A DNA stretch of 64,000 bases from Hyphochytrium catenoides (taxonomy: Eukaryota > Protista > Hyphochytriomycota): positions 62,001-126,000 of the forward strand of contig FLMG01001160.1 in the NCBI GenBank assembly GCA_900088475.1. The letters are read 5' to 3'. The notes under the pieces are model-generated. The model saw nothing but the letters and a program-made list of their open reading frames with translations, had not been told where the DNA came from and did no database searches. Numbering within the stretch: the stretch's first letter is position 1; every line of letters starts with the position of its first letter. Positions 385-55,712 of the stretch are shown piece by piece. The position numbers and the translations under genes are program-made.

Positions 385-3300
385 CTATTCGAGTTTACTA
401 TGGCTTGACATCATCCTAAGGAGTGACCTCGTGCTGGTTGATAGCCGCTGCTTAACATCCGTCACTAGCCGATCGACGTCATTGCGAGATAGATCTGTCT
501 CCGTCCGCCTAGATGATGAGGAATCTCTGGAGAGTAGGTCCCAGAAGGTTCCTTTAGCATCTCTCAGGTCCGAAAACGTGCCTTCTTCTACAAGCATCCC
601 GTCTTTGAAGACAAGTATCTTGTCGGCTTCAGCAGTGGTATGCAGTCGATGGGTGACCTGTGATTGAAGCGTATCTTAGCTGTGGGCCTTGAGTATACAT
701 TATCATCTGACCAGGCAACACGTACCGAGATCAAGGTGATCTTCCTTTCCTTGCAGAGCTTACGCACGGAGGACAGAATCTCGCTCTCGGTCTCAGGGTC
801 GAGAGCACTAGTTGCCTGGAATGGACAATGATCAGATTCGCATCTTTCTAGAAAACATAAAGGCGGGGATAACTAACCTCGTCGAGTAAAAGTATTGATG
901 GCTTTCTGCAGAGCGCTCTTGCAAGGCAGATCCGCTGTGCTTGGCCGCCGCTGATACTGACTTTTGCGTGCTGGCCGAGCACTGTGTTGAAGCCCTCATC
1001 CAGAGAGCTCACGAACTTGTCGCATTCCGCCAGCTTTGCAGCCTCAATGCAATCATCGTCCGTCGCAGTCACATTTCCATAACGAATATTCTCGAGAATG
1101 GTTCCGTTAAGTAACATCGTCTCTTGAAAGACGATTCCCACCTGCTTGAGGTAACTCTGATAGTCATAGTCATTCAAAGGGACGTCATCCACCCGGATGA
1201 CGCCTCCATTGGGTTCCCGAAACCTCAGCAAAAGGTTTAGGATTGTGCTCTTTCCGCCACCACTAGTACCACAGACACAAACGAAGGTACCTGCGGGTAC
1301 GAGGAAATTGGCGTGGTTGATGGTGTACTTGCTTTGCAGTGGCTGGTATTTGAAAGTTACGTCCTCAAAGCGGATGCCGGACGTAAGCGGAGCTGATGGC
1401 ATCCTAACAGCTCGAGTTGAATCCTTCATTCCTTGAGTATGAACATTGCTCTGTCGAGCAAGGAGGTTGTCAATCTTTTGCAGGCTTCCGGAGTTACTGA
1501 TTGCCCACCGCATGAAGCCACCGATGTTTGCAACGGGATTGATCATCCCGTTGTATAGCTGCACCATCGCTGTGAAAGAGCCAATGCTGAGGTCACCATC
1601 CGCCGAAGCTAAGGCCAAGGCAGCAGTCAGTAGTGCTATGAACAAGTTCATTCCAGAAGTCACTTCAATCTGAACGATGTTAGACCAAAGCTGACTCTTC
1701 ATAGTTGTTTGACGAAGAAGCTCGCTGCTCTTTTCAAACTTGTTTATAAAGTATGACTGCAATCCGTAAGCTCTGATAGCTTTCTGGCAAGTGATCCCGT
1801 TCTGGAACTCCGCTGCGAGATAGGCATTGTTGGTGACGTAGTCCTTGGACAAATTCGCAGCCTTAACACGTGGACCAACGATGAGGATGACCAGCATGAA
1901 GGATATCCCAACAAAGCCCGCTATCCACTGTCTGTAGAACACGTAGAGAATGGAAAAGATGACGGTGGCCGCGGGATTGATAAGATTCCAGACGATCGAA
2001 ATCCATAGCGTTGATACACGTTGAATGTCGCTGTTAAAAATGTTATTCAGCTCCCCCTCGGTATACAAAGAAAAGAACTCCGTAGGACTTGAGAGAGTAG
2101 TCTGTACGAGGTCCATTTGTAACTTTTTGATACCAGTTGATATGACTGCAGACTGTGCGTAGCCTAGCGCATTATTCCCTAGGATGTTGGGAATACATAG
2201 TACCAGCAGAAAGATGATATTTGTATGAACCGAAGAAGTGAGGCCATCTTTGAGACCATCTACAATGCCTTGTAGTGCGTAAGCTTGGGCAGGAGCCACT
2301 GCGGCTAGAATGATGCTTGAAAGGGTGGCCAGTAACACATTTCTTTTCTGGGTTGACCAGTGGCTTGCTGTGCTTTGAATCACCTCCAACGGCCCATACG
2401 CCATCTGGGCGTCGTGAACCACCATGGACTGCAGGTGCGCTATCATCTCAGACGCTGTCATCTTGGCAGGGCGGTGGATAAGGGCAGTAGCTAAGAATTC
2501 GAGATACTCTGGCATGCTTATCATACCACTCGTTTTCCCGCTAACTATTTCTAGGTCTCGATGAAGCACAAGCGCTTCGTTCAACGTACAGAAGGGAAAA
2601 GATCGGATAGCTTGCTGTACTGAGTCTACCGCAATCTGTAGCTCAGGCCCTGCATTCATACTACTCAACAGCAGCTGTGAATAACGCTGTGAGGCAGGTC
2701 TGGATAGGAGTCTACCACAGCAGATCATACTATGGACTGCCAGCAGAGCGAGGTCGACCTCATCTAGACCACTCTGAGCCGCAAAAGCAACTCTCACTGC
2801 CACGACGCCCACGATGGCCATCACAGCTGCCAGATCAATCAAATTTGTCTTCGATTTCTGAAAAAATTTGCCGAGCGCTCCCATCCGACAAAGCTGCTCA
2901 GCGGCCATGAATGTTGACAAACCAACTGCAACACACTGCAGGAAAAGGTCAGAGAGCTAGTTCGTTTTCTACATAAGGTACTGCCTTACCACTTCCCATA
3001 GCCAGGACGTCTGCAGAGCTGCGGCGCCTGAAGCGCTCTCAACAAACATACGTGCAAGAAGGACTGCCACTTGAAGCAGAAGCACAATGGAGCCGAGCTT
3101 GTAGACCCAGCCATTGACCCATCGAAGGCCATCTCGAGCTGACGAAAAGTCCTGCTTTTGCTCTTCTGATAGTCCTTTCTCCATTGTGCCGAGTTTCTCA
3201 GGACCTAGGATTGGAGGGACTGACATTGACCCAGACATAGCTAGATCATCCATCGCGTACCACGACTTCAAGAGCTTCAGGAGGAGTTATTTTTCGTAAT

Positions 3301-33879: not shown

Positions 33880-35773
<1,894 letters not shown>

Positions 35774-36219: not shown

Positions 36220-39189
36220 CTATGGCGATCTCGGTCTACAGTCTAACACCTCCTGCGTGATGTACTCTGATATTGCTTGGGTCCTAAGAAGAAGCTCCAG
36301 AAAGTGCTGGTGATCCTTGGGACAACGCTGGACAAAGTCATCCTCATCCAGCACGGCTATAGCCTCTGAAGCGTCTCCAATAACGAGACACTGCTCCTTG
36401 ATACCCAGAAGTAGTTCCGCTATCAGGGCATTGCACTGGCGAGCTATAATGGCAGCTGGCAGGACTGTGCATTGTCGGCTTCCATATAAGGTGGGCTGCT
36501 CAGGACCATCGCAGCGAGCATTATGCGGCTCCATGGCGTCTTGCAACTCCTCTCGTACCCTGTAAAAGGCCTCAGGTAGACGCTTCCCAGCCTCTGCCAG
36601 GGGATTCCAGCATACTGCCTCTACCTGTTCTGTCCCGTAAAGCTGGCCGTTGTCCAAGTCTACCACCACGACTGGCGATCCAGATCCTACACTAGCTAAA
36701 GTGAAGTACTCGGAGCAGATTCCTACGATAAAGGGGGTGGGGCACTCAAGCAGTGAGCCAAGCCTTTTGGGCAGTACAGGCGCGTAAACGTGGCACCATT
36801 GCAATGGACGAAGCAGATAACGTAGAGCTTCCCCGCACCCAGCTAGCCAGGCGTGTGATGTTGAGTAGAATAAAATTCGACATTCTAGCAAGGCACACGC
36901 TAGAAGCTGCAAGGTACTTGAGACACCCAGCCGCTCAAGCAAGGCGGAGATGTAGTCGGAATTTACATCCTCACCGACCCTACTCCAACTGCCAGTCACT
37001 GGAGACATTAAAGCCTCTTCGTCCTCCAGGTAAGGACTCATTGCCGACGGTCTCGACGAGGACCTATGAAATGAGCGGGACCTGACATATGCGCGGCTGG
37101 ACCTTGATACCATAGCCTCTAGTATGCTCTCAACTTCGGAGAAGGCACTCTCATCAACAGAGAAGTCTGGTTTCATGAGCGTATTTTTGAACACACGGCG
37201 GAGCATTGGTAAGATAGGACATCGTGATAGGATGCAGTGGCCCCGAAGGACAGTGGCCCCTAAGACAGTAGAATTGTTCTGCTTTTCATTCCGCTCCTCT
37301 TCGTTCCGAGCGTTGTAGACATAGGAGACTCCATAGTAGTCGCCTGAGGGCACTGAGTGAACGAAAGGAAAAATAGTCGGCAGCGGAGGACGTTCCGAAG
37401 GTTGAAGCAGTCTCTCGTCGGGCACCAAGAATGGCTGTATGCGTCTGTAGAGTGCTAAACACTCGGTCTCTCCTTGCGGCCCGGGATGCAGTTTTCGCAA
37501 ATGTATGGCTTTAACACTTGACGTAGGTTGGCTCCATGCTACCTGATCCTGGGTTAGACTTCTTGATACTCCCTCCCTAACCTCAAAAGAGACAATCAAT
37601 TCTACTAGAGTGTCCTCAGAAGCCATGTTCCGAAGAGAGTGGTGAGGGATCCGGAAGACAGGGCTCTGATGAATCTGTAAGCCTTTTGGAACCTCTGCTT
37701 GCTTGATTAGTTGGCTGAGCTTAGGGCTGGTTGGAGGCCTATTCCTCTTATCTGTAGAGTCCAACACTTGGCTATCTTCTAGAGCTTCCCTATCGTCTAA
37801 TAGGGCTTTATAGAGCTTGCTGCGGAGGAAGCGTGGATAGAGAGACGCTTCCATGGTAACGAACAGCTCCTACAATATTGAGAAGCAAACATGAGAAAGA
37901 AATTCACCTTGACTGAGCAAACAACCCCCTGCTGAATCTGAGCCCTGTCTCTCCTTGCTTTTCTTTCATTTGGTCTTCTCATTAGGTATCTCCCTTGCAT
38001 AGCCCACGATGTAACGTACTCTAACCCGTTCTAGCTGATCAACCCTACCTGCTGGATCCTTTGCAATGCAGACATCAAATGCGCTTTGCCATCCTCCTNN
38101 NNNNNNNNNNNNNNNNNNNNNNNNNNNNNNNNNNNNNNNNACGCGCAAGAACTGGCTTCAGAGTAAACTCAAGCTGCATCCAGATAAAGAGAGTCATGTG
38201 CTGTCTGGTCTGCAAGAGAAAGAGCAGAAAGTAGTGCGCTGCCCTGGTGTTCTGCAATGCGGCGCGCAAGCGCGTTAGGGGTGACAGGCACAGAGAGATA
38301 TGAGTGTAACACTGGCTCTTACAGCTAGAGTCTTGTCCAAAGGCAGATACTGCCCCACAGAGCCTAACTCGTTCACCATCTCCGCATACTGTGAGCTCCC
38401 CTGAAATCTGGGGAGCTCTTTTTTAGTGAGGTCGTTCTCAATGATGCGTTGGAGGTCTTCTAACGCGGCATCTAGAGTGTCCACGCTCAACAGCTTCTTC
38501 TTCAAAGAGGCTACAGCGTTGCTGTCAAGCCTCAGCGCTGAGGCTATTTCGAAGGGGGAGCTTGACTGAAAGTATTTCTCGTATATCCGTATGCAGTGGG
38601 ATCTCCTAGGAGGTAGAACAGTCAGTGAGGGATAGATAAGGCAGCTCAGCCATGTAATGCAGGGGTTCTCTTAGGTGTCTATAGAACTCTACTCGCACCT
38701 CTGTTCTTTAGAAACCATCTTGACTTGGTAAATCTGTAGAAGAACTAGAACTTTGGACCTCCGGACGTCGGACGATAAGTACTCGAGGAAGTAAGGCAGC
38801 CTGTTAGGATCCTTGATAAGAAAGTCTAGCGACAGTTGCTCTTCTCTGTCCTTGAACAGTCCAGGACTGGCCCTTGGTCGCTCAATCGTTACAGCAGTGG
38901 GGTGGATGGTAGAGTGTTGTCGAGCTTGACTGATTAGGCCGCGGTTACTTGAACGTCCTCTAGTATCTGGAAGAATAGCACCAACGGAGCTCGGCACTAT
39001 GGCCTCCATTATCGCTGACCTAACCCCCACAGATCCCGCAGCAGCCAAGCTGCTTGGGCGGCGCGAGTTTGAGTGCGTGGGTGCATTCTCAGATTTAGCT
39101 GGTGCACCTGAAGGGGACCCCGTCGGGTATCCTTCCTCTTCGCCGAACAGCCATGATTCCAGCCTTCTGGCTCTATTAAGGAGAGACAT
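36220..39189 (-). CDS. RGS-RGS-DENN domain protein (putative G-alpha GAP and Rab GEF)
   Basis: RGS-like 1: LSLDFLIKDPNRLPYFLEYL...IRIYEKYF...ELPRFQGSSQY. RGS-like 2: LPLDKTLANTRAAHYFLLFL...MEASLYPRFLRSKLY. DENN core: ALLECRILFYS...LLRPLQWCHVYAPVLP...LECPTPFIVGI...VVVDLD; dDENN: FLELLLRTQAISEYI. An N-gap at 38099-38140 leaves the central splicing unresolved. Confidence 0.8.
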
Positions 39190-40177: not shown

Positions 40178-42352
40178 ATGACCTGGCGGTATATTCTGCG
40201 AAGAGGCGGCAGGGTTGCCCCAGCCCAGCTGAAGGGACTTATTCGCTGGGAGGGAAGGAAGATAATGGGCTCCAGCCGTGGACTTGCTGTGGCGGGATAT
40301 TCCCACGGTTTATTCGTCACAGATTTACTACCCCAGCCGGCGACGTACTATAGTCCGAAGAAACGTGATAGTCAACCGGAGCCGCAGGAACTAGAGTGGA
40401 CACGTCCAGAAGCACGTCAGTCTGACCTTGAACAGCAACTACTTCAGACACTTGCGTCGCCGGACATTACGGTGCCTGAGATGTTGACGAAGCTCAAGGA
40501 ATACGAGGCTAAGACGCAGAAAGTGATTTGCTGGGCTTACACGACGGTAATACAGAGGTGTCGGCGAACGGGGAAACATGAGCATTTTCTCATGGTGTAT
40601 GATGCAGTGCGGGGCTTAGAAGCCGAGCTTCAGTGTGATGCCTTCCGGACACTCTTTTCATACTTTGCGGGACAATGCAGTGACCTAAAGCGGACAACCA
40701 GTCTCCTGAAGTGGACATTGGATCATCAACTGGAGGCCAACAGGATCGAGATCTTGAGACCAGTATGGGAGGATGCATTTTTGCTCTTCTGCCGACTGCA
40801 CGCTCCCGCACACGCTTTTGAGATCTGGAAACTATACGCTCGTCATGGGTTGCAGCCGTCACGGGATATGTGGAACTACTTTGTCTCAATGTGCGGAAGA
40901 ATGGGAAAGATTGACCAATTGGACGCCGTGCTTAGAGATATGATCTCCGTGAATAAGCTGGTACCAAGGCCCGGTACTCTTCACCGTGTGATGCTAGCCT
41001 ACATTGAAGCGAACAGAATTGACAAGGCGGAGATGCTGCTGCAATGGATTATGGATCAGAAGGTGATGCTCAATAGCAATGACTTGCCTATATCCATCAT
41101 GAAGCTCTACGAAGTAAAAGCAGACGTAGCAGAGGCACACTCAATGTTCAAATGGCTCAGGGAGGACAAAAAGGTGGTGCTACCTGTAGCTGCCAACAAC
41201 ATTATGCTCAAAATGTATGCCAAAAACCAGCTAGCTGACTACGCCTCCATTCTGTTGGAAACCATGATAGAAGAAGGCCAAAGGAAAAGACTTCGGAGGC
41301 CGAATGTGGAAAGCTTCAACGCGGTACTCCAGGCGCACGCTGCTGCCGGGAATTTGGAAAAGGCCCTTGCGACCTTCAAAGTTATGACTGAGAGGTACAA
41401 GATTGACCCCGATGAGACCACCAACGCTATCATCGGAAGCTTTGCCCATCGATACGACCTAAAGGACTTTTTGAGGCGGGTCATGCCCTACAAAGGTTTT
41501 TTGCCGTCACTTCTTGTCGAGTATTGGCAACGATCAGATTGGAAGAAAGTCATTGAGGTTGCCAAGGTCATGGATAACCAAGGCATAAGCCATACCAGAT
41601 TATCAAAGCTCCTCGCTGCAGGGTCGCATGCCGTGGTAGGGAGTAGTTCAACAGCCAAGGATCTGATATTAAGCTACCTTGCTGAGGGTGGCAAGCAAGT
41701 CAAGGCAACTACCTGCACCAAAATACTGCGTGCCGTGGGGTCCGCGTTTGGCAGCCATGAGGCTATTACGCTTTACAGACGGCTGCAAGAGAAAGGCCTG
41801 AAGCCTGACATTGTTCTCTTTACCGCCCTTATTCACATAACTACAAAGGAAAAGAACGTCATGGCGGCAGAGGAGGTACTTGCGGCAATGGTAGCCCAGA
41901 ATATGAAGCCAGACTTTCGTGTTCTTACCAGTCTGCAAAAGCTCTATTGCGAAGCGGCCGAGGTCTCAAAAGCAGAGCAAGTATTTGACGGGTTCTACTC
42001 AATTCAAAAGAGGCCTCCATCCTCAGTGTTCGTCCACTTAATCGTGATGTATCGAAGACTGCAGCGCTTCGATGAAGCCTTAAAGGTTTTTCAGAGATTG
42101 CGAAGCACAGGATACAAGCCAAATCCCGAGATTTATTCCTTTTTGCTCTTCGGAGGGGTGCCAGATGATAAGGAGGCTATTCAAGCGGAGATTGCTTCAG
42201 GTCCGAGCTGGGCACAACGAGAGGCAGAGCTCCAGTCTACCTGCAAGGTTTGGCTAGATAGAGCACACATCGCAATGGCTGGCGACGGCATCAGCATTGA
42301 TGAAGTCTGCGATGCTAGAAGAAAAGTTCTTTCTAGGGGGCTTCCCAAGTGA
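40178..42352 (+). CDS. Pentatricopeptide repeat (PPR) protein, intronless, probably mitochondrial
   Basis: 724-aa ORF with ~35-aa repeats (PNVESFNAVLQAHAAAGNLEKALATFKVM, GLKPDIVLFTALI, GYKPNPEIYSFLL) and an Arg-rich, acid-poor N-terminus. Confidence 0.9.
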   Translation: MTWRYILRRGGRVAPAQLKGLIRWEGRKIMGSSRGLAVAGYSHGLFVTDLLPQPATYYSPKKRDSQPEPQELEWTRPEARQSDLEQQLLQTLASPDITVPEMLTKLKEYEAKTQKVICWAYTTVIQRCRRTGKHEHFLMVYDAVRGLEAELQCDAFRTLFSYFAGQCSDLKRTTSLLKWTLDHQLEANRIEILRPVWEDAFLLFCRLHAPAHAFEIWKLYARHGLQPSRDMWNYFVSMCGRMGKIDQLDAVLRDMISVNKLVPRPGTLHRVMLAYIEANRIDKAEMLLQWIMDQKVMLNSNDLPISIMKLYEVKADVAEAHSMFKWLREDKKVVLPVAANNIMLKMYAKNQLADYASILLETMIEEGQRKRLRRPNVESFNAVLQAHAAAGNLEKALATFKVMTERYKIDPDETTNAIIGSFAHRYDLKDFLRRVMPYKGFLPSLLVEYWQRSDWKKVIEVAKVMDNQGISHTRLSKLLAAGSHAVVGSSSTAKDLILSYLAEGGKQVKATTCTKILRAVGSAFGSHEAITLYRRLQEKGLKPDIVLFTALIHITTKEKNVMAAEEVLAAMVAQNMKPDFRVLTSLQKLYCEAAEVSKAEQVFDGFYSIQKRPPSSVFVHLIVMYRRLQRFDEALKVFQRLRSTGYKPNPEIYSFLLFGGVPDDKEAIQAEIASGPSWAQREAELQSTCKVWLDRAHIAMAGDGISIDEVCDARRKVLSRGLPK

Positions 42353-52800: not shown

Positions 52801-55712
52801 CCCTTCACTCGGTCCTTGGGGGAAAGATAGGGCACGCCGGGTCAGCCGCTTCCGCGCATTGTTCACACCCCTTATTGCTGTTGAGCTCACCTCTGATCTA
52901 AACTCGTTGATGCTGAACCAGACCACAAAGTCAACATATCCCTTCGCAGTGATGAGGAAGGGCACCAGCTGCAAGGCGAGAGGATTTGGGGTTAATTAGA
53001 AGATGATCGGAGGCGTTCGAGCTACTGAAAGTTACCCAAGAGACTAGTCAGCACTCTAGTTGAGACTAGCACAAGTTGAACCGTAAGGTTCCAAACAAAA
53101 GAGTCACGCTATTGCTGTGACCGCAATCGTAGGCAGTGACCAAAGAGAGGCTGAGGCAGAAGGGACAATGTGCACCCAGACTATAGCTTGCTACCGCCTC
53201 CATTCCTCACCTGCTTCAACCAAATGTCATTTCTCGATTTTAAGCCATCGATTTCACCAGTTTCATCGTCATATCGATAGAAGTCTGAACCAAAGGTGAA
53301 GAGGAAAGGTATGTAGAAGCAGAAGACAATAGACCAGTAGAGAAGAATCGCCAAAACGTAGAGAGTGACCGAGCGAAGCACCCTCATGCGTAAGTCCAAT
53401 GTCTTGAGCAGCCCTTGACGAAGACGGTTCCAGGCGAAGAGTGTAACATAGACTCCGAAACTACAATTTAGATGGAAGTAAAAGAGGAAGGAAGGTCAGC
53501 CATTGTCTCTGCTCGACGGTATAGCCGTTTTCTGAGCACACCTGTAGAAGATGATAAGCCAAGCATAGAAAAACACCCACGAGCGCCAATTTGCTGCCGT
53601 CGGGTTCGTGCTTCTCATCTGGACATTGGTCCAGCAAAAATCGCCCACATCCGACTGACCAGAGAAGCTCTCTTCGGACGCTAAGATGATGGCGGCAATC
53701 GCCGAGGAACCCCAGACTATTAGATGATAGAAGCGAACATTCCGCTTATAGTCCGTGAAGGGATTGGTGAGTGATTGGCGAAGGTCGATGGTCATCATAA
53801 AGAACCAGGCCTCGGCTGCGAAGATTGTAAACTCAATAATTCCCGCCTAGGTAAAGAGAGCCAGAGAAGACAGCAATCAGGAAAACGTCTAGTCCAACGG
53901 CGCAGCAATAGAGCGACACATAATACATTAAGAGCCGGCCGGGTTTAAGAGCATATAGCCCTCAATCTAGTCAGATAAGGGAGAGGTAGCAAGAGGAAAG
54001 CGCCGGAAAGAGAGGACAAATGCGGCTAATGGAGAGCCAGAGCTTTAAAGTGCTAAGGTGACTCTAGAGCGGAAAATGGGACACGGCAGACGCTGACAAG
54101 ACAGAAACAGAGAGGCATAGAGGGTACGTTTAGATTATTTCCTCCTACCGTGACTCGACAAGCAGTCTTATTAGATATTTCCAGGTTGCTCCCACAGGAA
54201 TCAAAGCCGTCGGAGCACTTCACCACCGAGGTGATGAGCACCACCAGGCTGAACACAAGATCGCAACAGGAGCGGTAATAAATCAATGGATTTGGATGCT
54301 TCTTCCATGTGCGTCGCGTGGAGTAGGTAAAGACCACCGAAAGACAGGAAATAACGGAGATGACACTGCCTGTGATGGTGCCTATAGGAAAAATTGGCCA
54401 CTCACTACCAACGAACGAAGGGAAAACACGAGTGCTTAGTGTAAGCCAAATGAGTTCCATGTCCAGCGAGCAATAAAAATGAACGTGCGACGAACATTAT
54501 AGTTGGACTACATAGCAGAGGTTCAAGCAGTATATCCCGCCCTAGAGAACTTAAAGTCAAAGGTACTGAGAGTATCACAGCCAGACCAGAAGATCAAAAT
54601 GATGCAGTAGCAGCAGATATGAGAGAGCCAAGCGTGTGGCTAGCAGCATTTGACGAGGATCACCTTCCAGGAGGATCAAAGTCGGCGAAGATCAAGCTTG
54701 TCACAAGGCCAATTAAGAAGAGGAGGAACATCGTCAACTGCTGCCTCCAGTTCTTTCTCAGAAGGGCTGAGCTCGCAGACAAACATCCTTTTCCCTCGTC
54801 TCCACCAATGGTGCGGTCAGAAGGGTGCATGCTTTGGATGTTTCTGGCTGAGTCTAGTGGGACCTCATTGTCGCCCGGCTTTCGTCTTCGTCCCTCTGCC
54901 CGTTTCGGCTCTCGGTCTTCCTGCAAGTCCTCACTGCGGTAGCTGAGCAACATGAGCCTATATGAAGCAAGATACTATACATACTTCCCCAATCTTCTGT
55001 CTCCCACGCTCTCTACCTCTGAGCTCGTCTATTCCTGGCATAACTCTTTTACCATTCCCAATCTAGACGTTTATCCCTGTAACCTACGTACCCGAAGGCT
55101 CGGAAGTCTGGTTCATACTTCGGGGAGCGGTCAATGTACGAAGACCGAGAGCTGGTAGGTTGGTTCGGAGGAAATCTCTGCTCGTCAACCTCAATATCCA
55201 CCTAGCAAGGGTATGAGAAACTCCACGTTAGCCATAAGACAATAAGTGACTTCCCCGCAAGGATACACTCTTACAGCAGGAAGTGGATCCGGAAGCTGTC
55301 TTCCACTTGCTGGTAGACCAGACGGGTCTACTCTTCCGCCTGCCGGACGTGAAGGTGCTGGCTGTAAGACGTTTGCCGCGTAGCCTCCCGCCACCATGCG
55401 AGTGCCCGGAGTGTAATAGCCGCCAGCAGCATAACCCGCACCGTCAGGACCATTTCCTGCAGCAGCTGCAGCATACCCTCCGGGCCCTCCTGCAGCAGCA
55501 GCGTAACCTCCTCGGCCTCCAGCTGCCCCATACTGTCCATACGTAGCAGCATAGGATCGACCCCCGCCAGGTCCTAGGTAGCCTCCTGCAGCTGTTGTTT
55601 GTCCGGCATAAGCTCCCGTTGGGCCATTGCCATACATCCCTGCTGCTTGGTAGCGGTAAGGGTTGCCATTTCTTGCCCGGCCATTCTCTTCCTGCCCCGT
55701 AGAGTTATCCAT
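49889..55712 (-). CDS. GPCR-PIPK: 7TM receptor fused to a phosphatidylinositol-phosphate kinase, with a long N-terminal extension
   Basis: cAMP-receptor-like 7TM region (GSVISVISCLSVVFTY, HPNPLIYYRSCCD, SLTNPF, FCW, KGYVDFVVWF). PIPK motifs: FTDYYPHIFRQIR, SEGASGAFMYFSSDQKYIVK, RFYGCH, YDIKGSWVNR, LKDND, IMDYSLLIGVH, YFGLIDILQ, SAAPPEQYRLRF. 5' exons 55712-55275, 55201-55092 and 54942-54664 splice in frame to 54404. Confidence 0.88.

What the first reader, a model, noticed from the sequence alone, without database searches (positions are those of the whole stretch)
36220..39189. Tandem RGS-RGS-DENN fusion protein
Seen: two RGS-like units, each opening with L.L..LL/TL...YF..Y/FL and closing with PRF..S..Y, precede a full DENN module. 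Known: RGS domains bind or act as GAPs for G-alpha, DENN domains are Rab GEFs, and the well-studied animal DENN proteins lack RGS domains. Inference: a direct link from heterotrimeric G proteins to Rab activation, analogous to RGS-RhoGEFs. The usual ENxxFW motif is not evident, so these may be binding modules rather than GAPs.
Basis: partly seen in the sequence, partly recalled or inferred. Interest (0 to 1): 0.7.

Follow-up and report, generated by a model that had tools for sequence, protein, structure and literature searches.

The report
Conserved RGS-RGS-DENN Rab exchange factor gene
This is a real four-exon gene of a water-mould relative (probably Hyphochytrium catenoides) for a protein of about 900 residues with two degenerate RGS-type domains joined to a complete DENN Rab-activating module; the layout is shared with oomycetes and some other protists, is unstudied, and the RGS parts look like binding modules rather than G-protein switch-off enzymes.

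Summary
On the minus strand, 39189 to 36220, lies a four-exon gene (GT..AG introns of 93, 71 and 179 nt).

- **Domains.** It encodes a conserved N-terminal motif, two RGS-like units and a full uDENN-cDENN-dDENN module.
- **Assembly gap.** The gap sits inside RGS unit 2. Contigs from two public runs bridge it with 118 letters instead of 42 N. That puts both flanks in frame (2703 nt, 900 codons), but I could not see the letters themselves.
- **RGS and DENN are one gene.** The last helices of unit 2 and the whole DENN module share one uninterrupted exon.
- **Not a one-off fusion.** Colinear orthologues occur in 30 or more oomycete species. Looser relatives with the same layout occur in chlorarachniophytes. 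Databases list them only under automatic names, and I found no paper on them.
- **Probably not GAPs.** In every family member whose RGS region was aligned, both units lack the Glu-Asn pair and the loop Asn; the loop of the window's unit 2 is unread. Canonical RGS domains of this same genome keep these G-alpha contacts. GAP activity is therefore unlikely.

New member of a catalogued but uncharacterised family; moderate interest.

The parts
38699..39189 (-). Exon 1. Holds the ATG at 39189, the conserved N-terminal motif (L-E-S-W-L-F-G-E-E), a disordered stretch and the first helices of RGS unit 1. It ends in phase 2, with donor GT at 38698.
   Evidence: ORF and frames. Colinear with Albugo P0001 residues 2-151. 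Splice sites and upstream stop.
38606..38698 (-). Intron 1, 93 nt, GT..AG, with a CTGAC branch-like site.
38323..38605 (-). Exon 2. Holds the rest of RGS unit 1 (through L-P-R-F...Q-Y), a short linker and the first helix of unit 2.
   Evidence: Pfam RGS 1.2e-5, 26.1 bits, profile positions 50-116. Aligns with P0001 residues 165-249 and tiles onto unit 1 of the oomycete alignment.
38252..38322 (-). Intron 2, 71 nt, GT..AG, with a CTAAC branch site.
38049..38251 (-). Exon 3, the middle of RGS unit 2. It is interrupted by the assembly gap.
   Evidence: The left part (38141-38251) is 58-67% identical to unit 2 of oomycete orthologues. The right part (38049-38096) runs in phase 0 into exon 4.
38099..38140 (.). 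Assembly gap, written as 42 N. The true length is 118 nt, about 40 codons together with the two flanking bases. It covers the central helices and the alpha5-alpha6 loop of unit 2.
   Evidence: Contigs of X1 and X2 bridge it: 'skips 42, 118 letters between'. Frame arithmetic. The implied 56 residues between the flanking motifs compare with 61 in Phytophthora.
37870..38048 (-). Intron 3, 179 nt, GT..AG.
36220..37869 (-). Exon 4, one open frame of 549 codons plus TAG. It holds the last helices of RGS unit 2, a linker and the whole DENN module.
38374..38835 (-). RGS-like unit 1 (contains intron 1).
   Evidence: Pfam. Profile hits to RGS1, RGS17, RGS3 and RGS2 in PDB. The Albugo counterpart folds as an RGS domain, Z about 14, rmsd 1.8-2.5 A.
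37798..38346 (-). RGS-like unit 2 (contains introns 2 and 3 and the gap).
   Evidence: The orthologous unit passes Pfam RGS over profile positions 3-115. The profile hits RGS7 and RGS12 in PDB. The window fragments align to it.
36235..37665 (-). DENN module: a longin-type uDENN lobe, cDENN (Pfam match 36649-36951) and dDENN (Pfam match 36250-36348).
   Evidence: Pfam DENN 1.4e-28. PDB sequence hits to DENND1B and DENND1A. Model residues 69-545 align with DENND1B residues 2-374, Z 21.4.

Best explanation
This is a single-copy nuclear gene, probably of Hyphochytrium catenoides. It encodes a protein of about 900 residues from a conserved stramenopile/rhizarian family. The layout is a short conserved N-terminal motif, two non-canonical RGS-homology domains in tandem, a disordered linker, and a complete DENN module.

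The DENN module most likely works as a guanine-nucleotide exchange factor for a Rab GTPase. That is inferred from the family, not shown here.

The two RGS-homology domains have lost the residues that canonical RGS proteins use to stabilise the G-alpha transition state. They most likely act as non-catalytic modules that bind a GTP-loaded GTPase or target the protein. This would place or switch on the exchange factor at a membrane.

My odds for the bound partner are about 35% G-alpha-GTP, 35% a Rab-GTP, and 30% something else or an intramolecular role.
For: Gene model:
- All three introns are GT..AG, there is a stop upstream of the ATG, and the CDS is 2703 nt once the gap is taken as 118 nt.
- Every exon is colinear with Albugo P0001 and with the 19-species oomycete alignment.
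- A search of the own genome with the tandem profile matched only this locus (the profile includes this gene's own exon fragments).

RGS homology:
- Pfam.
- PDB profile hits.
- RGS fold for unit 1 of the Albugo orthologue.

DENN:
-.

Loss of GAP residues:
- Six canonical RGS domains of the same genome keep V-E-N, E-[IV]-N-[IV]-S and N-R-F.
- The fused units have neither the E-N pair nor the loop Asn, in the window and in all orthologues and distant relatives aligned.
- The window's RGS match is among the weakest of 65 in this genome.

Possible partners:
- At least 2 G-alpha genes are present.
- RGS domains that bind Rab-GTP are documented (PMC13596360).

Conservation of the fusion:
-.
Against: - No RNA data could be laid on the gene. 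Splicing and expression are inferred from homology and splice signals only.
- The 118 gap letters are unseen, so a stop or a small intron there is not excluded, and the alpha5-alpha6 loop of the window's unit 2 is unread.
- The DENN model has only moderate confidence (mean pLDDT 62).
- Some RGS-homology domains without the canonical residues still bind G-alpha (rgRGS of RhoGEFs, GRK2; from general knowledge). Sequence alone therefore cannot decide the partner.
- Ser replaces the loop Asn in active RZ-type RGS proteins, and Albugo unit 1 has Ser there.
Confidence: 0.72

Rival explanations
1. The tandem RGS-homology domains bind activated G-alpha, and so couple heterotrimeric G-protein signalling directly to Rab activation, as RGS-RhoGEFs couple G-alpha12/13 to Rho.
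For: - RGS homology is real.
- The genome has at least 2 G-alpha genes and a large RGS repertoire.
- The fusion is conserved across lineages that have G-alpha.
- rgRGS domains also lack canonical GAP residues yet bind G-alpha (general knowledge).
Against: - Of the RGS4 contact residues mapped here, only the Arg before Phe survives.
- Unit 1 carries a 3-4 residue insertion in the loop that touches switch I.
- There is no direct binding evidence anywhere.
Confidence: 0.3
2. The RGS-homology domains bind Rab-GTP. The protein would then be effector and exchange factor in one chain, giving a Rab cascade or a positive feedback loop, with no link to heterotrimeric G proteins.
For: - SNX13 and SNX14 RGS domains bind Rab5, Rab9, Rab11 and Rab32 in the GTP form, while canonical RGS8 does not (PMC13596360).
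- The tandem RGS domains of D-AKAP2 bind Rab4 and Rab11 (Eggers 2009, cited in PMC3425129 and PMC13596360).
- The SNX25 RGS domain ties for best structural match to unit 1, Z 14.3.
- The partner domain here is itself a Rab regulator.
Against: - The structural match to SNX25 is tied with canonical RGS16, RGS3 and RGS4, so it does not discriminate.
- No Rab-binding residues are defined that could be checked.
- The Rab-binding result is a 2026 preprint.
Confidence: 0.3
3. One or both units are active GAPs for G-alpha, so the protein both terminates G-protein signalling and activates a Rab.
For: - Both units are true RGS homologues.
- Albugo unit 1 has Ser at the loop position, as in active RZ-type RGS proteins.
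- The Arg of the P-R-F motif is kept.
Against: - The E-N pair is absent from both units in all members aligned.
- The loop residue is Ala in the window and in P. sojae unit 1, and Leu or Ala in unit 2 of the oomycetes.
- Canonical RGS domains of the same genome keep all of these.
Confidence: 0.07
4. Artefact. The gap hides a misjoin or a stop, so the RGS part and the DENN part are two genes, or the gene is broken.
For: - The assembly as written (42 N) is out of frame.
- No RNA evidence was obtained.
Against: - Two runs give one contig each across the gap, with the same 118 letters' length, which restores the frame.
- The resulting unit length matches the orthologues.
- The end of RGS unit 2 and the DENN module lie in one open exon.
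- The same order is seen in complete transcript-derived ORFs of relatives.
Confidence: 0.03

Closest known systems
Oomycete 'UDENN domain-containing protein' / 'RGS domain' orthogroup (e.g. Albugo laibachii F0WS.. = P0001, Phytophthora sojae PHYSODRAFT_255868 = P0018, Achlya hypogyna ACHHYP_03615 = P0066)
   Same: It has the same N-terminal motif, the same two RGS units, the same linker position and the same DENN module. It is colinear over the full length. The first part of unit 2 is 58-67% identical.
   Different: Only 27-29% identity over the DENN part, and about equally distant from peronosporalean and saprolegnian members. This fits a sister lineage. The window protein is slightly shorter (900 against 912-1120 residues) and lacks the insertion in unit 1 that oomycetes carry after the second helix.
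DENND1A/DENND1B (connecdenn) GEF domain, Rab35 exchange factors (PDB 3TW8, 6EKK)
   Same: A two-lobed DENN fold with 333 of 343 residues superposable, Z 21.4. The sequence motif around the P-x-x-W-x-H-V-Y-x-P-V-L-P core is shared.
   Different: 15-18% identity. The window protein has long disordered insertions and an N-terminal RGS tandem in place of the C-terminal clathrin/AP-2 motifs of DENND1. The Rab substrate is unknown.
RGS-RhoGEFs (p115RhoGEF, LARG, PDZ-RhoGEF)
   Same: The logic is alike: an RGS-homology domain placed N-terminal to an exchange factor for a small GTPase.
   Different: These have a single rgRGS domain with its own extra elements and a DH-PH exchange factor for Rho, and they are animal proteins. 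Pfam RGS-like (PF09128) does not match the window protein. G-alpha binding is not shown here.
SNX13/SNX14/SNX25 RGS domains and the tandem RGS domains of D-AKAP2 (AKAP10)
   Same: These are non-canonical RGS-homology domains in trafficking proteins that bind Rab-GTP (PMC13596360). D-AKAP2 also has two RGS domains in tandem. SNX25 is among the best structural matches.
   Different: There is no PXA/PX or PKA-binding context, and no sequence similarity beyond that of the RGS superfamily. No family-specific relationship was established.

Membership tests
RGS domain superfamily (Pfam PF00615, nine-helix RGS fold) | Profile match above the curated cut-off | tested here: met
   Window exon 2 alone scores 26.1 bits against 23.9, and the six-frame genome scan gives 26.7 bits. 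In the orthologues each unit scored alone gives 40 and 38 bits (P0018) and 32.4 and 31.3 bits (P0001). The window units could not be scored whole, because unit 1 is split by an intron and unit 2 by the gap.
RGS domain superfamily (Pfam PF00615, nine-helix RGS fold) | RGS fold | tested here: met
   The AlphaFold model of the Albugo tandem has pLDDT 82.5. Unit 1 aligns to RGS16, RGS4, RGS3 and SNX25 at Z about 14, rmsd 1.8-2.5 A over about 120 residues. Unit 2 was not searched on its own. It is all-helical in the model, and its RGS assignment rests on sequence profiles.
Catalytic RGS GAPs (R4/R7/R12/RZ type) | Glu-Asn pair before F-W (RGS4 E87/N88; residue numbers from memory) | tested here: not met
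   Unit 1 has S-K-V (Q-V in oomycetes) and unit 2 has M-T (F-E in oomycetes) at the aligned positions. Six canonical RGS domains of the same genome all have E-N.
Catalytic RGS GAPs (R4/R7/R12/RZ type) | Asn (Ser in the RZ type) in the alpha5-alpha6 loop (RGS4 N128) | tested here: not met
   Unit 1 has Ala followed by a 3-4 residue insertion in the window. For unit 2 this position lies in the unread gap in the window, and the orthologues have Leu or Ala. The canonical paralogues have E-[IV]-N-[IV]-S.
Catalytic RGS GAPs (R4/R7/R12/RZ type) | Acceleration of G-alpha GTP hydrolysis | not testable with these tools
   Needs a biochemical assay.
DENN-domain Rab GEFs | Core DENN profile match | tested here: met
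   PF02141 scores 100.6 bits against 23.4, but only profile positions 86-185 are matched. DENND1B gives 4.6e-9 by sequence.
DENN-domain Rab GEFs | Tripartite module: longin-type uDENN plus DENN plus dDENN | tested here: met
   Pfam uDENN gives no hit and dDENN scores 22.7 bits, below 26.8. The model aligns over DENND1B residues 2-374, 333 residues, Z 21.4, and also to DENND10 at Z 16.4. Model confidence is moderate (pLDDT 62).
DENN-domain Rab GEFs | Nucleotide exchange on a Rab | not testable with these tools
   Needs a GEF assay against the organism's Rabs.
Oomycete-type RGS-RGS-DENN orthogroup | Full-length colinearity, including the N-terminal motif, and a single copy | tested here: met
   The tandem profile matched only this locus in the own genome; that profile includes this gene's own exon fragments.
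RGS-RhoGEF-like G-alpha effectors | RGS-like (rgRGS, PF09128) profile and binding to activated G-alpha | tested here: not met
   No PF09128 match at E up to 1 in the window exons or in P0001/P0018. Binding cannot be tested. This is a resemblance in logic only.
Rab-binding RGS domains (SNX13/14/25, D-AKAP2) | Specific similarity beyond the general RGS fold; GTP-dependent Rab binding | tested here: inconclusive
   SNX25 at Z 14.3 is tied with canonical RGS domains. SNX13 and SNX25 appear only as weak profile hits. Binding cannot be tested.

The most novel reading that the evidence does not exclude
The RGS-RGS-DENN family would be an old SAR-wide switch. Its degenerate RGS domains would read the GTP state of another GTPase (G-alpha, or an upstream Rab) and so turn on a DENN exchange factor. 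That would be the first direct, single-chain coupling of receptor/G-protein signalling (or of one Rab) to Rab activation, a Rab counterpart of the RGS-RhoGEFs.
Probability: 0.3. Interest if true: 0.75.

Novelty: new member of a known kind. Interest (0 to 1): 0.45.

Why it matters
DENN proteins are the largest class of Rab exchange factors, and what recruits and switches them on is mostly unknown. Here a DENN module has stayed fused to two RGS-homology domains across oomycetes (including major crop and fish pathogens), a hyphochytrid and chlorarachniophytes. That argues for a functional coupling.

The family offers a simple test of whether non-canonical RGS domains are general GTPase-GTP readers. 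The question was raised in 2026 for SNX13/14. It also tests whether G-protein signalling feeds directly into membrane traffic in these organisms. No paper on the family was found, so the field is open, but the gene itself is one more member of a catalogued family.

Tried and rejected
- **Reading the gap letters.** An exact-product look-up of the Logan contig that spans the gap found nothing; records of this genome appear to be withheld. Read laying gave the length (118) but not the letters.
- **A second copy or haplotig in the own genome.** There is none.
- **RNA evidence.** No listed run is on record as RNA. Reads were laid on the gap, so splicing and expression remain untested.
- **P0002, an ENA protein of 900 residues with the most similar DENN core.** A profile comparison with the tandem-RGS alignment gave only 23 columns at E 0.069. 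It is not counted as a family member.
- **Global alignment of the exon fragments with P0001.** This scattered them and was replaced by pairwise BLAST.
- **Bacterial promoter/terminator scan.** It is meaningless for this eukaryotic gene.
- **Literature.** Six full-text searches found no paper on RGS fused to DENN. Anantharaman et al. 2011 (PMC3396428), the survey most likely to list the architecture, is not held, so prior mention there cannot be excluded.
- **Joined spliced protein.** I did not search or fold it. The window's own RGS units were therefore never scored whole, and the tandem structure was predicted for the Albugo orthologue.
Full report
**Organism and setting.** The window is eukaryotic and gene-dense. 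A split C2H2 zinc-finger gene lies at 33880-35773 (+) and a PPR-like gene at 40178-42352 (+), on either side of the finding. The assembly has 61.0 Mb in 4759 records. Earlier notes of the scan call it a relative of the oomycetes, probably Hyphochytrium catenoides. The genome paper reports 4758 scaffolds plus a mitochondrial record, Illumina runs from 2011 and a later HiSeq set, and a diploid genome with about 2.75% SNPs (PMC5795050). That fits the run years and the scattered single-base differences seen. I take the identification as likely, not proven. That paper mentions neither RGS nor DENN.

**Gene model.** The gene is on the minus strand. Six-frame translation and the sequence give four exons:

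| Exon | Coordinates |
|---|---|
| 1 | 39189-38699 |
| 2 | 38605-38323 |
| 3 | 38251-38049 |
| 4 | 37869-36220 |

- The introns are 93, 71 and 179 nt, and all are GT..AG. Intron 2 has a CTAAC branch site; intron 1 has a CTGAC branch-like site.
- An in-frame stop lies 8 codons upstream of the ATG.
- Each exon translation matches the Albugo laibachii protein P0001 in order. Exon 1 matches residues 2-151, exon 2 residues 165-249, the left part of exon 3 residues 253-285 (58% identity), and exon 4 residues 348-373 and 458-910.
The joined protein was never built, searched or folded.

**The gap.**
- The assembly gap (38099-38140) lies inside exon 3, in the middle of RGS unit 2.
- As written (42 N), the two flanks are out of frame.
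- Contigs from two public DNA runs of the same organism each cross it. Both have 118 letters between 38098 and 38141.
- 118 plus the two bases 38098-38097 make 120 nt, or 40 codons. This joins the two reading frames exactly and gives a CDS of 2703 nt, or 900 residues.
- The implied 56 residues between the P-V-L-A-R and E-L-F-V-T motifs compare with 61 in Phytophthora.
- The letters themselves were not shown, and a look-up of the contig failed. A stop or a tiny intron in the gap is therefore unlikely but not excluded, and this part of unit 2 is unread.

**One gene, not two.** The closing helices of RGS unit 2 (E-L-F-V-T-M-E-A-S-L-Y-P-R-F-L-R-S-K-L-Y) and the whole DENN module lie in the same uninterrupted 549-codon exon. 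The RGS and DENN parts therefore cannot be separate transcripts unless unit 2 is itself cut. Complete transcript-derived ORFs of relatives carry both parts. I obtained no RNA evidence for this gene.

**Domains: RGS.**
- Exon 2 alone passes the Pfam RGS cut-off, at 26.1 bits against 23.9.
- In the orthologues each unit passes alone: 40 and 38 bits in P. sojae, 32.4 and 31.3 bits in Albugo.
- Profiles of unit 1 and of unit 2 find RGS1, RGS17, RGS3, RGS7 and RGS12 among solved structures.
- An AlphaFold model of the Albugo tandem has mean pLDDT 82.5. Its unit 1 matches RGS domains at Z about 14 and rmsd 1.8-2.5 A over about 120 residues.
- Unit 2 was not tested separately by structure.

**Domains: DENN.**
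- Pfam DENN scores 100.6 bits. dDENN scores 22.7 bits, just under its cut-off.
- DENND1B and DENND1A are the only PDB sequence hits.
- The model of exon 4 has mean pLDDT 62. It superposes on 333 of 343 residues of the DENND1B GEF domain at Z 21.4, across both the longin lobe and the DENN lobe.

**A family, not a one-off.**
- A word search with the Albugo protein found the same RGS-plus-DENN layout in Phytophthora, Pythium, Globisporangium, Lagenidium, Hyaloperonospora, Peronospora, Bremia, Plasmopara, Peronosclerospora and others. All carry only automatic names.
- The ESM Atlas holds a cluster of 83 members, mostly Oomycota, with DENN in 100% and RGS in 75%.
- An exhaustive HMMER search of 1.84 billion representatives with the tandem-RGS profile found only 156 proteins at E up to 0.001, and 11 at 1e-30 or better.
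- I checked the eight longest non-redundant hits that span both units. All carry DENN, and seven of the eight also pass the Pfam RGS scan; the Amorphochlora hit P0115 shows only DENN and uDENN. They are:
  - Achlya hypogyna;
  - a second, shorter paralogue in Lagenidium;
  - three chlorarachniophytes (Norrisiella, Chlorarachnion, Amorphochlora);
  - one EukProt transcript with an added PH domain;
  - two unnamed sequences.
- The window protein is about equally distant from peronosporalean and saprolegnian members, as expected for a sister lineage.
- Within this genome the tandem profile, which includes the window's own exon fragments, matched no other locus.

**Are the RGS units GAPs?**
- The same genome has at least 65 RGS hits, and the window's hit is among the weakest.
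- Six of the best canonical ones all show V/E-E-N before the aromatic pair, E-[IV]-N-[IV]-S in the alpha5-alpha6 loop, and N-R-F.
- At the aligned positions the fused units have no Glu-Asn pair. Unit 1 has Ala (Ser in Albugo) followed by a 3-4 residue insertion in place of the loop Asn. Unit 2 of the orthologues has Leu or Ala there. Only the Arg before Phe is kept.
- The same holds in the chlorarachniophyte and other distant members.
- The mapping to RGS4 residues E87, N88, N128 and R167 rests on my memory of the RGS4-Gi-alpha1 structure and on the alignments shown. I conclude that GAP activity is unlikely.

**Which partner?**
- A 2026 preprint shows that the non-canonical RGS domains of SNX13 and SNX14 bind Rab5, Rab9, Rab11 and Rab32 in the GTP form, while canonical RGS8 does not. 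It names D-AKAP2, with its two RGS domains, as a precedent (PMC13596360; Eggers 2009 is cited in PMC3425129).
- A Rab-binding tandem fused to a Rab exchange factor would give a Rab cascade or a feedback loop.
- The structural matches do not discriminate, since SNX25 ties with RGS16, RGS3 and RGS4.
- I rate the two partners as about equally likely.

**Literature.** Six full-text searches found no paper that describes RGS fused to DENN. Two oomycete G-protein signalling papers do not mention it, nor does the DENN survey of Zhang et al. 2012. The GPCR-system survey PMC3971589 does not mention DENN. The RGS architecture survey of Anantharaman et al. 2011 could not be read.

**Verdict.** The gene is a new, hyphochytrid member of a catalogued but unstudied family. 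It is of moderate interest, mainly as a ready test case for what non-canonical RGS domains bind.

Noticed in passing
own genome G000, e.g. C3438:7218-7544, C4108:239120-239458, C44:2452-2772 (loci L005-L010): There are at least 65 six-frame RGS-domain hits over the Pfam cut-off, many in open frames of 200-350 residues. The six I read keep the canonical E-N and loop Asn. This looks like a large canonical RGS family for a stramenopile.
   Followed up: partly
G000:C3226:135525-135821 and C3226:156788-157774 (L002): An RGS hit lies about 21 kb from the best G-alpha gene on the same contig.
   Followed up: no
window 38099-38140: The assembly gap written as 42 N is 118 nt long in contigs of two public runs. 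Single-base differences between the runs and the assembly around it fit the reported heterozygosity (PMC5795050).
   Followed up: yes
window 39130-39165 (exon 1, residues about 9-20): A short N-terminal motif, L-[ED]-x-W-L-F-G-E-[ED], is shared by the window protein and all oomycete orthologues. Its function is unknown.
   Followed up: no
proteins P0094, P0097, P0115/P0209, P0074, P0087: The tandem RGS plus DENN layout also occurs in three chlorarachniophytes (1419-1625 residues), in a EukProt transcript with an added PH domain, and as a second, shorter paralogue in Lagenidium giganteum.
   Followed up: partly
PDB 9fqr chain Ou, against model m2f816e31ae29 residues 8-271: A protein of the bovine sperm axonemal doublet aligns over both RGS units of the Albugo tandem (236 residues, Z 12.8, very high rmsd). 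It may be another tandem-RGS protein. I did not identify it.
   Followed up: no
window 54664-55712 and 2490-3130: Earlier notes on this window list a GPCR-PIPK gene and an ABC transporter with a voltage-sensor-like front end. Both are signalling and transport oddities of the same lineage. I did not examine them.
   Followed up: no
window 33880-35773 (+) and 40178-42352 (+): The flanking genes are a Gln/Ser-rich protein ending in C2H2 zinc fingers, which seems split by an intron near 35390-35560, and a 724-residue PPR-like repeat protein. Intergenic spacers are under 1 kb.
   Followed up: no
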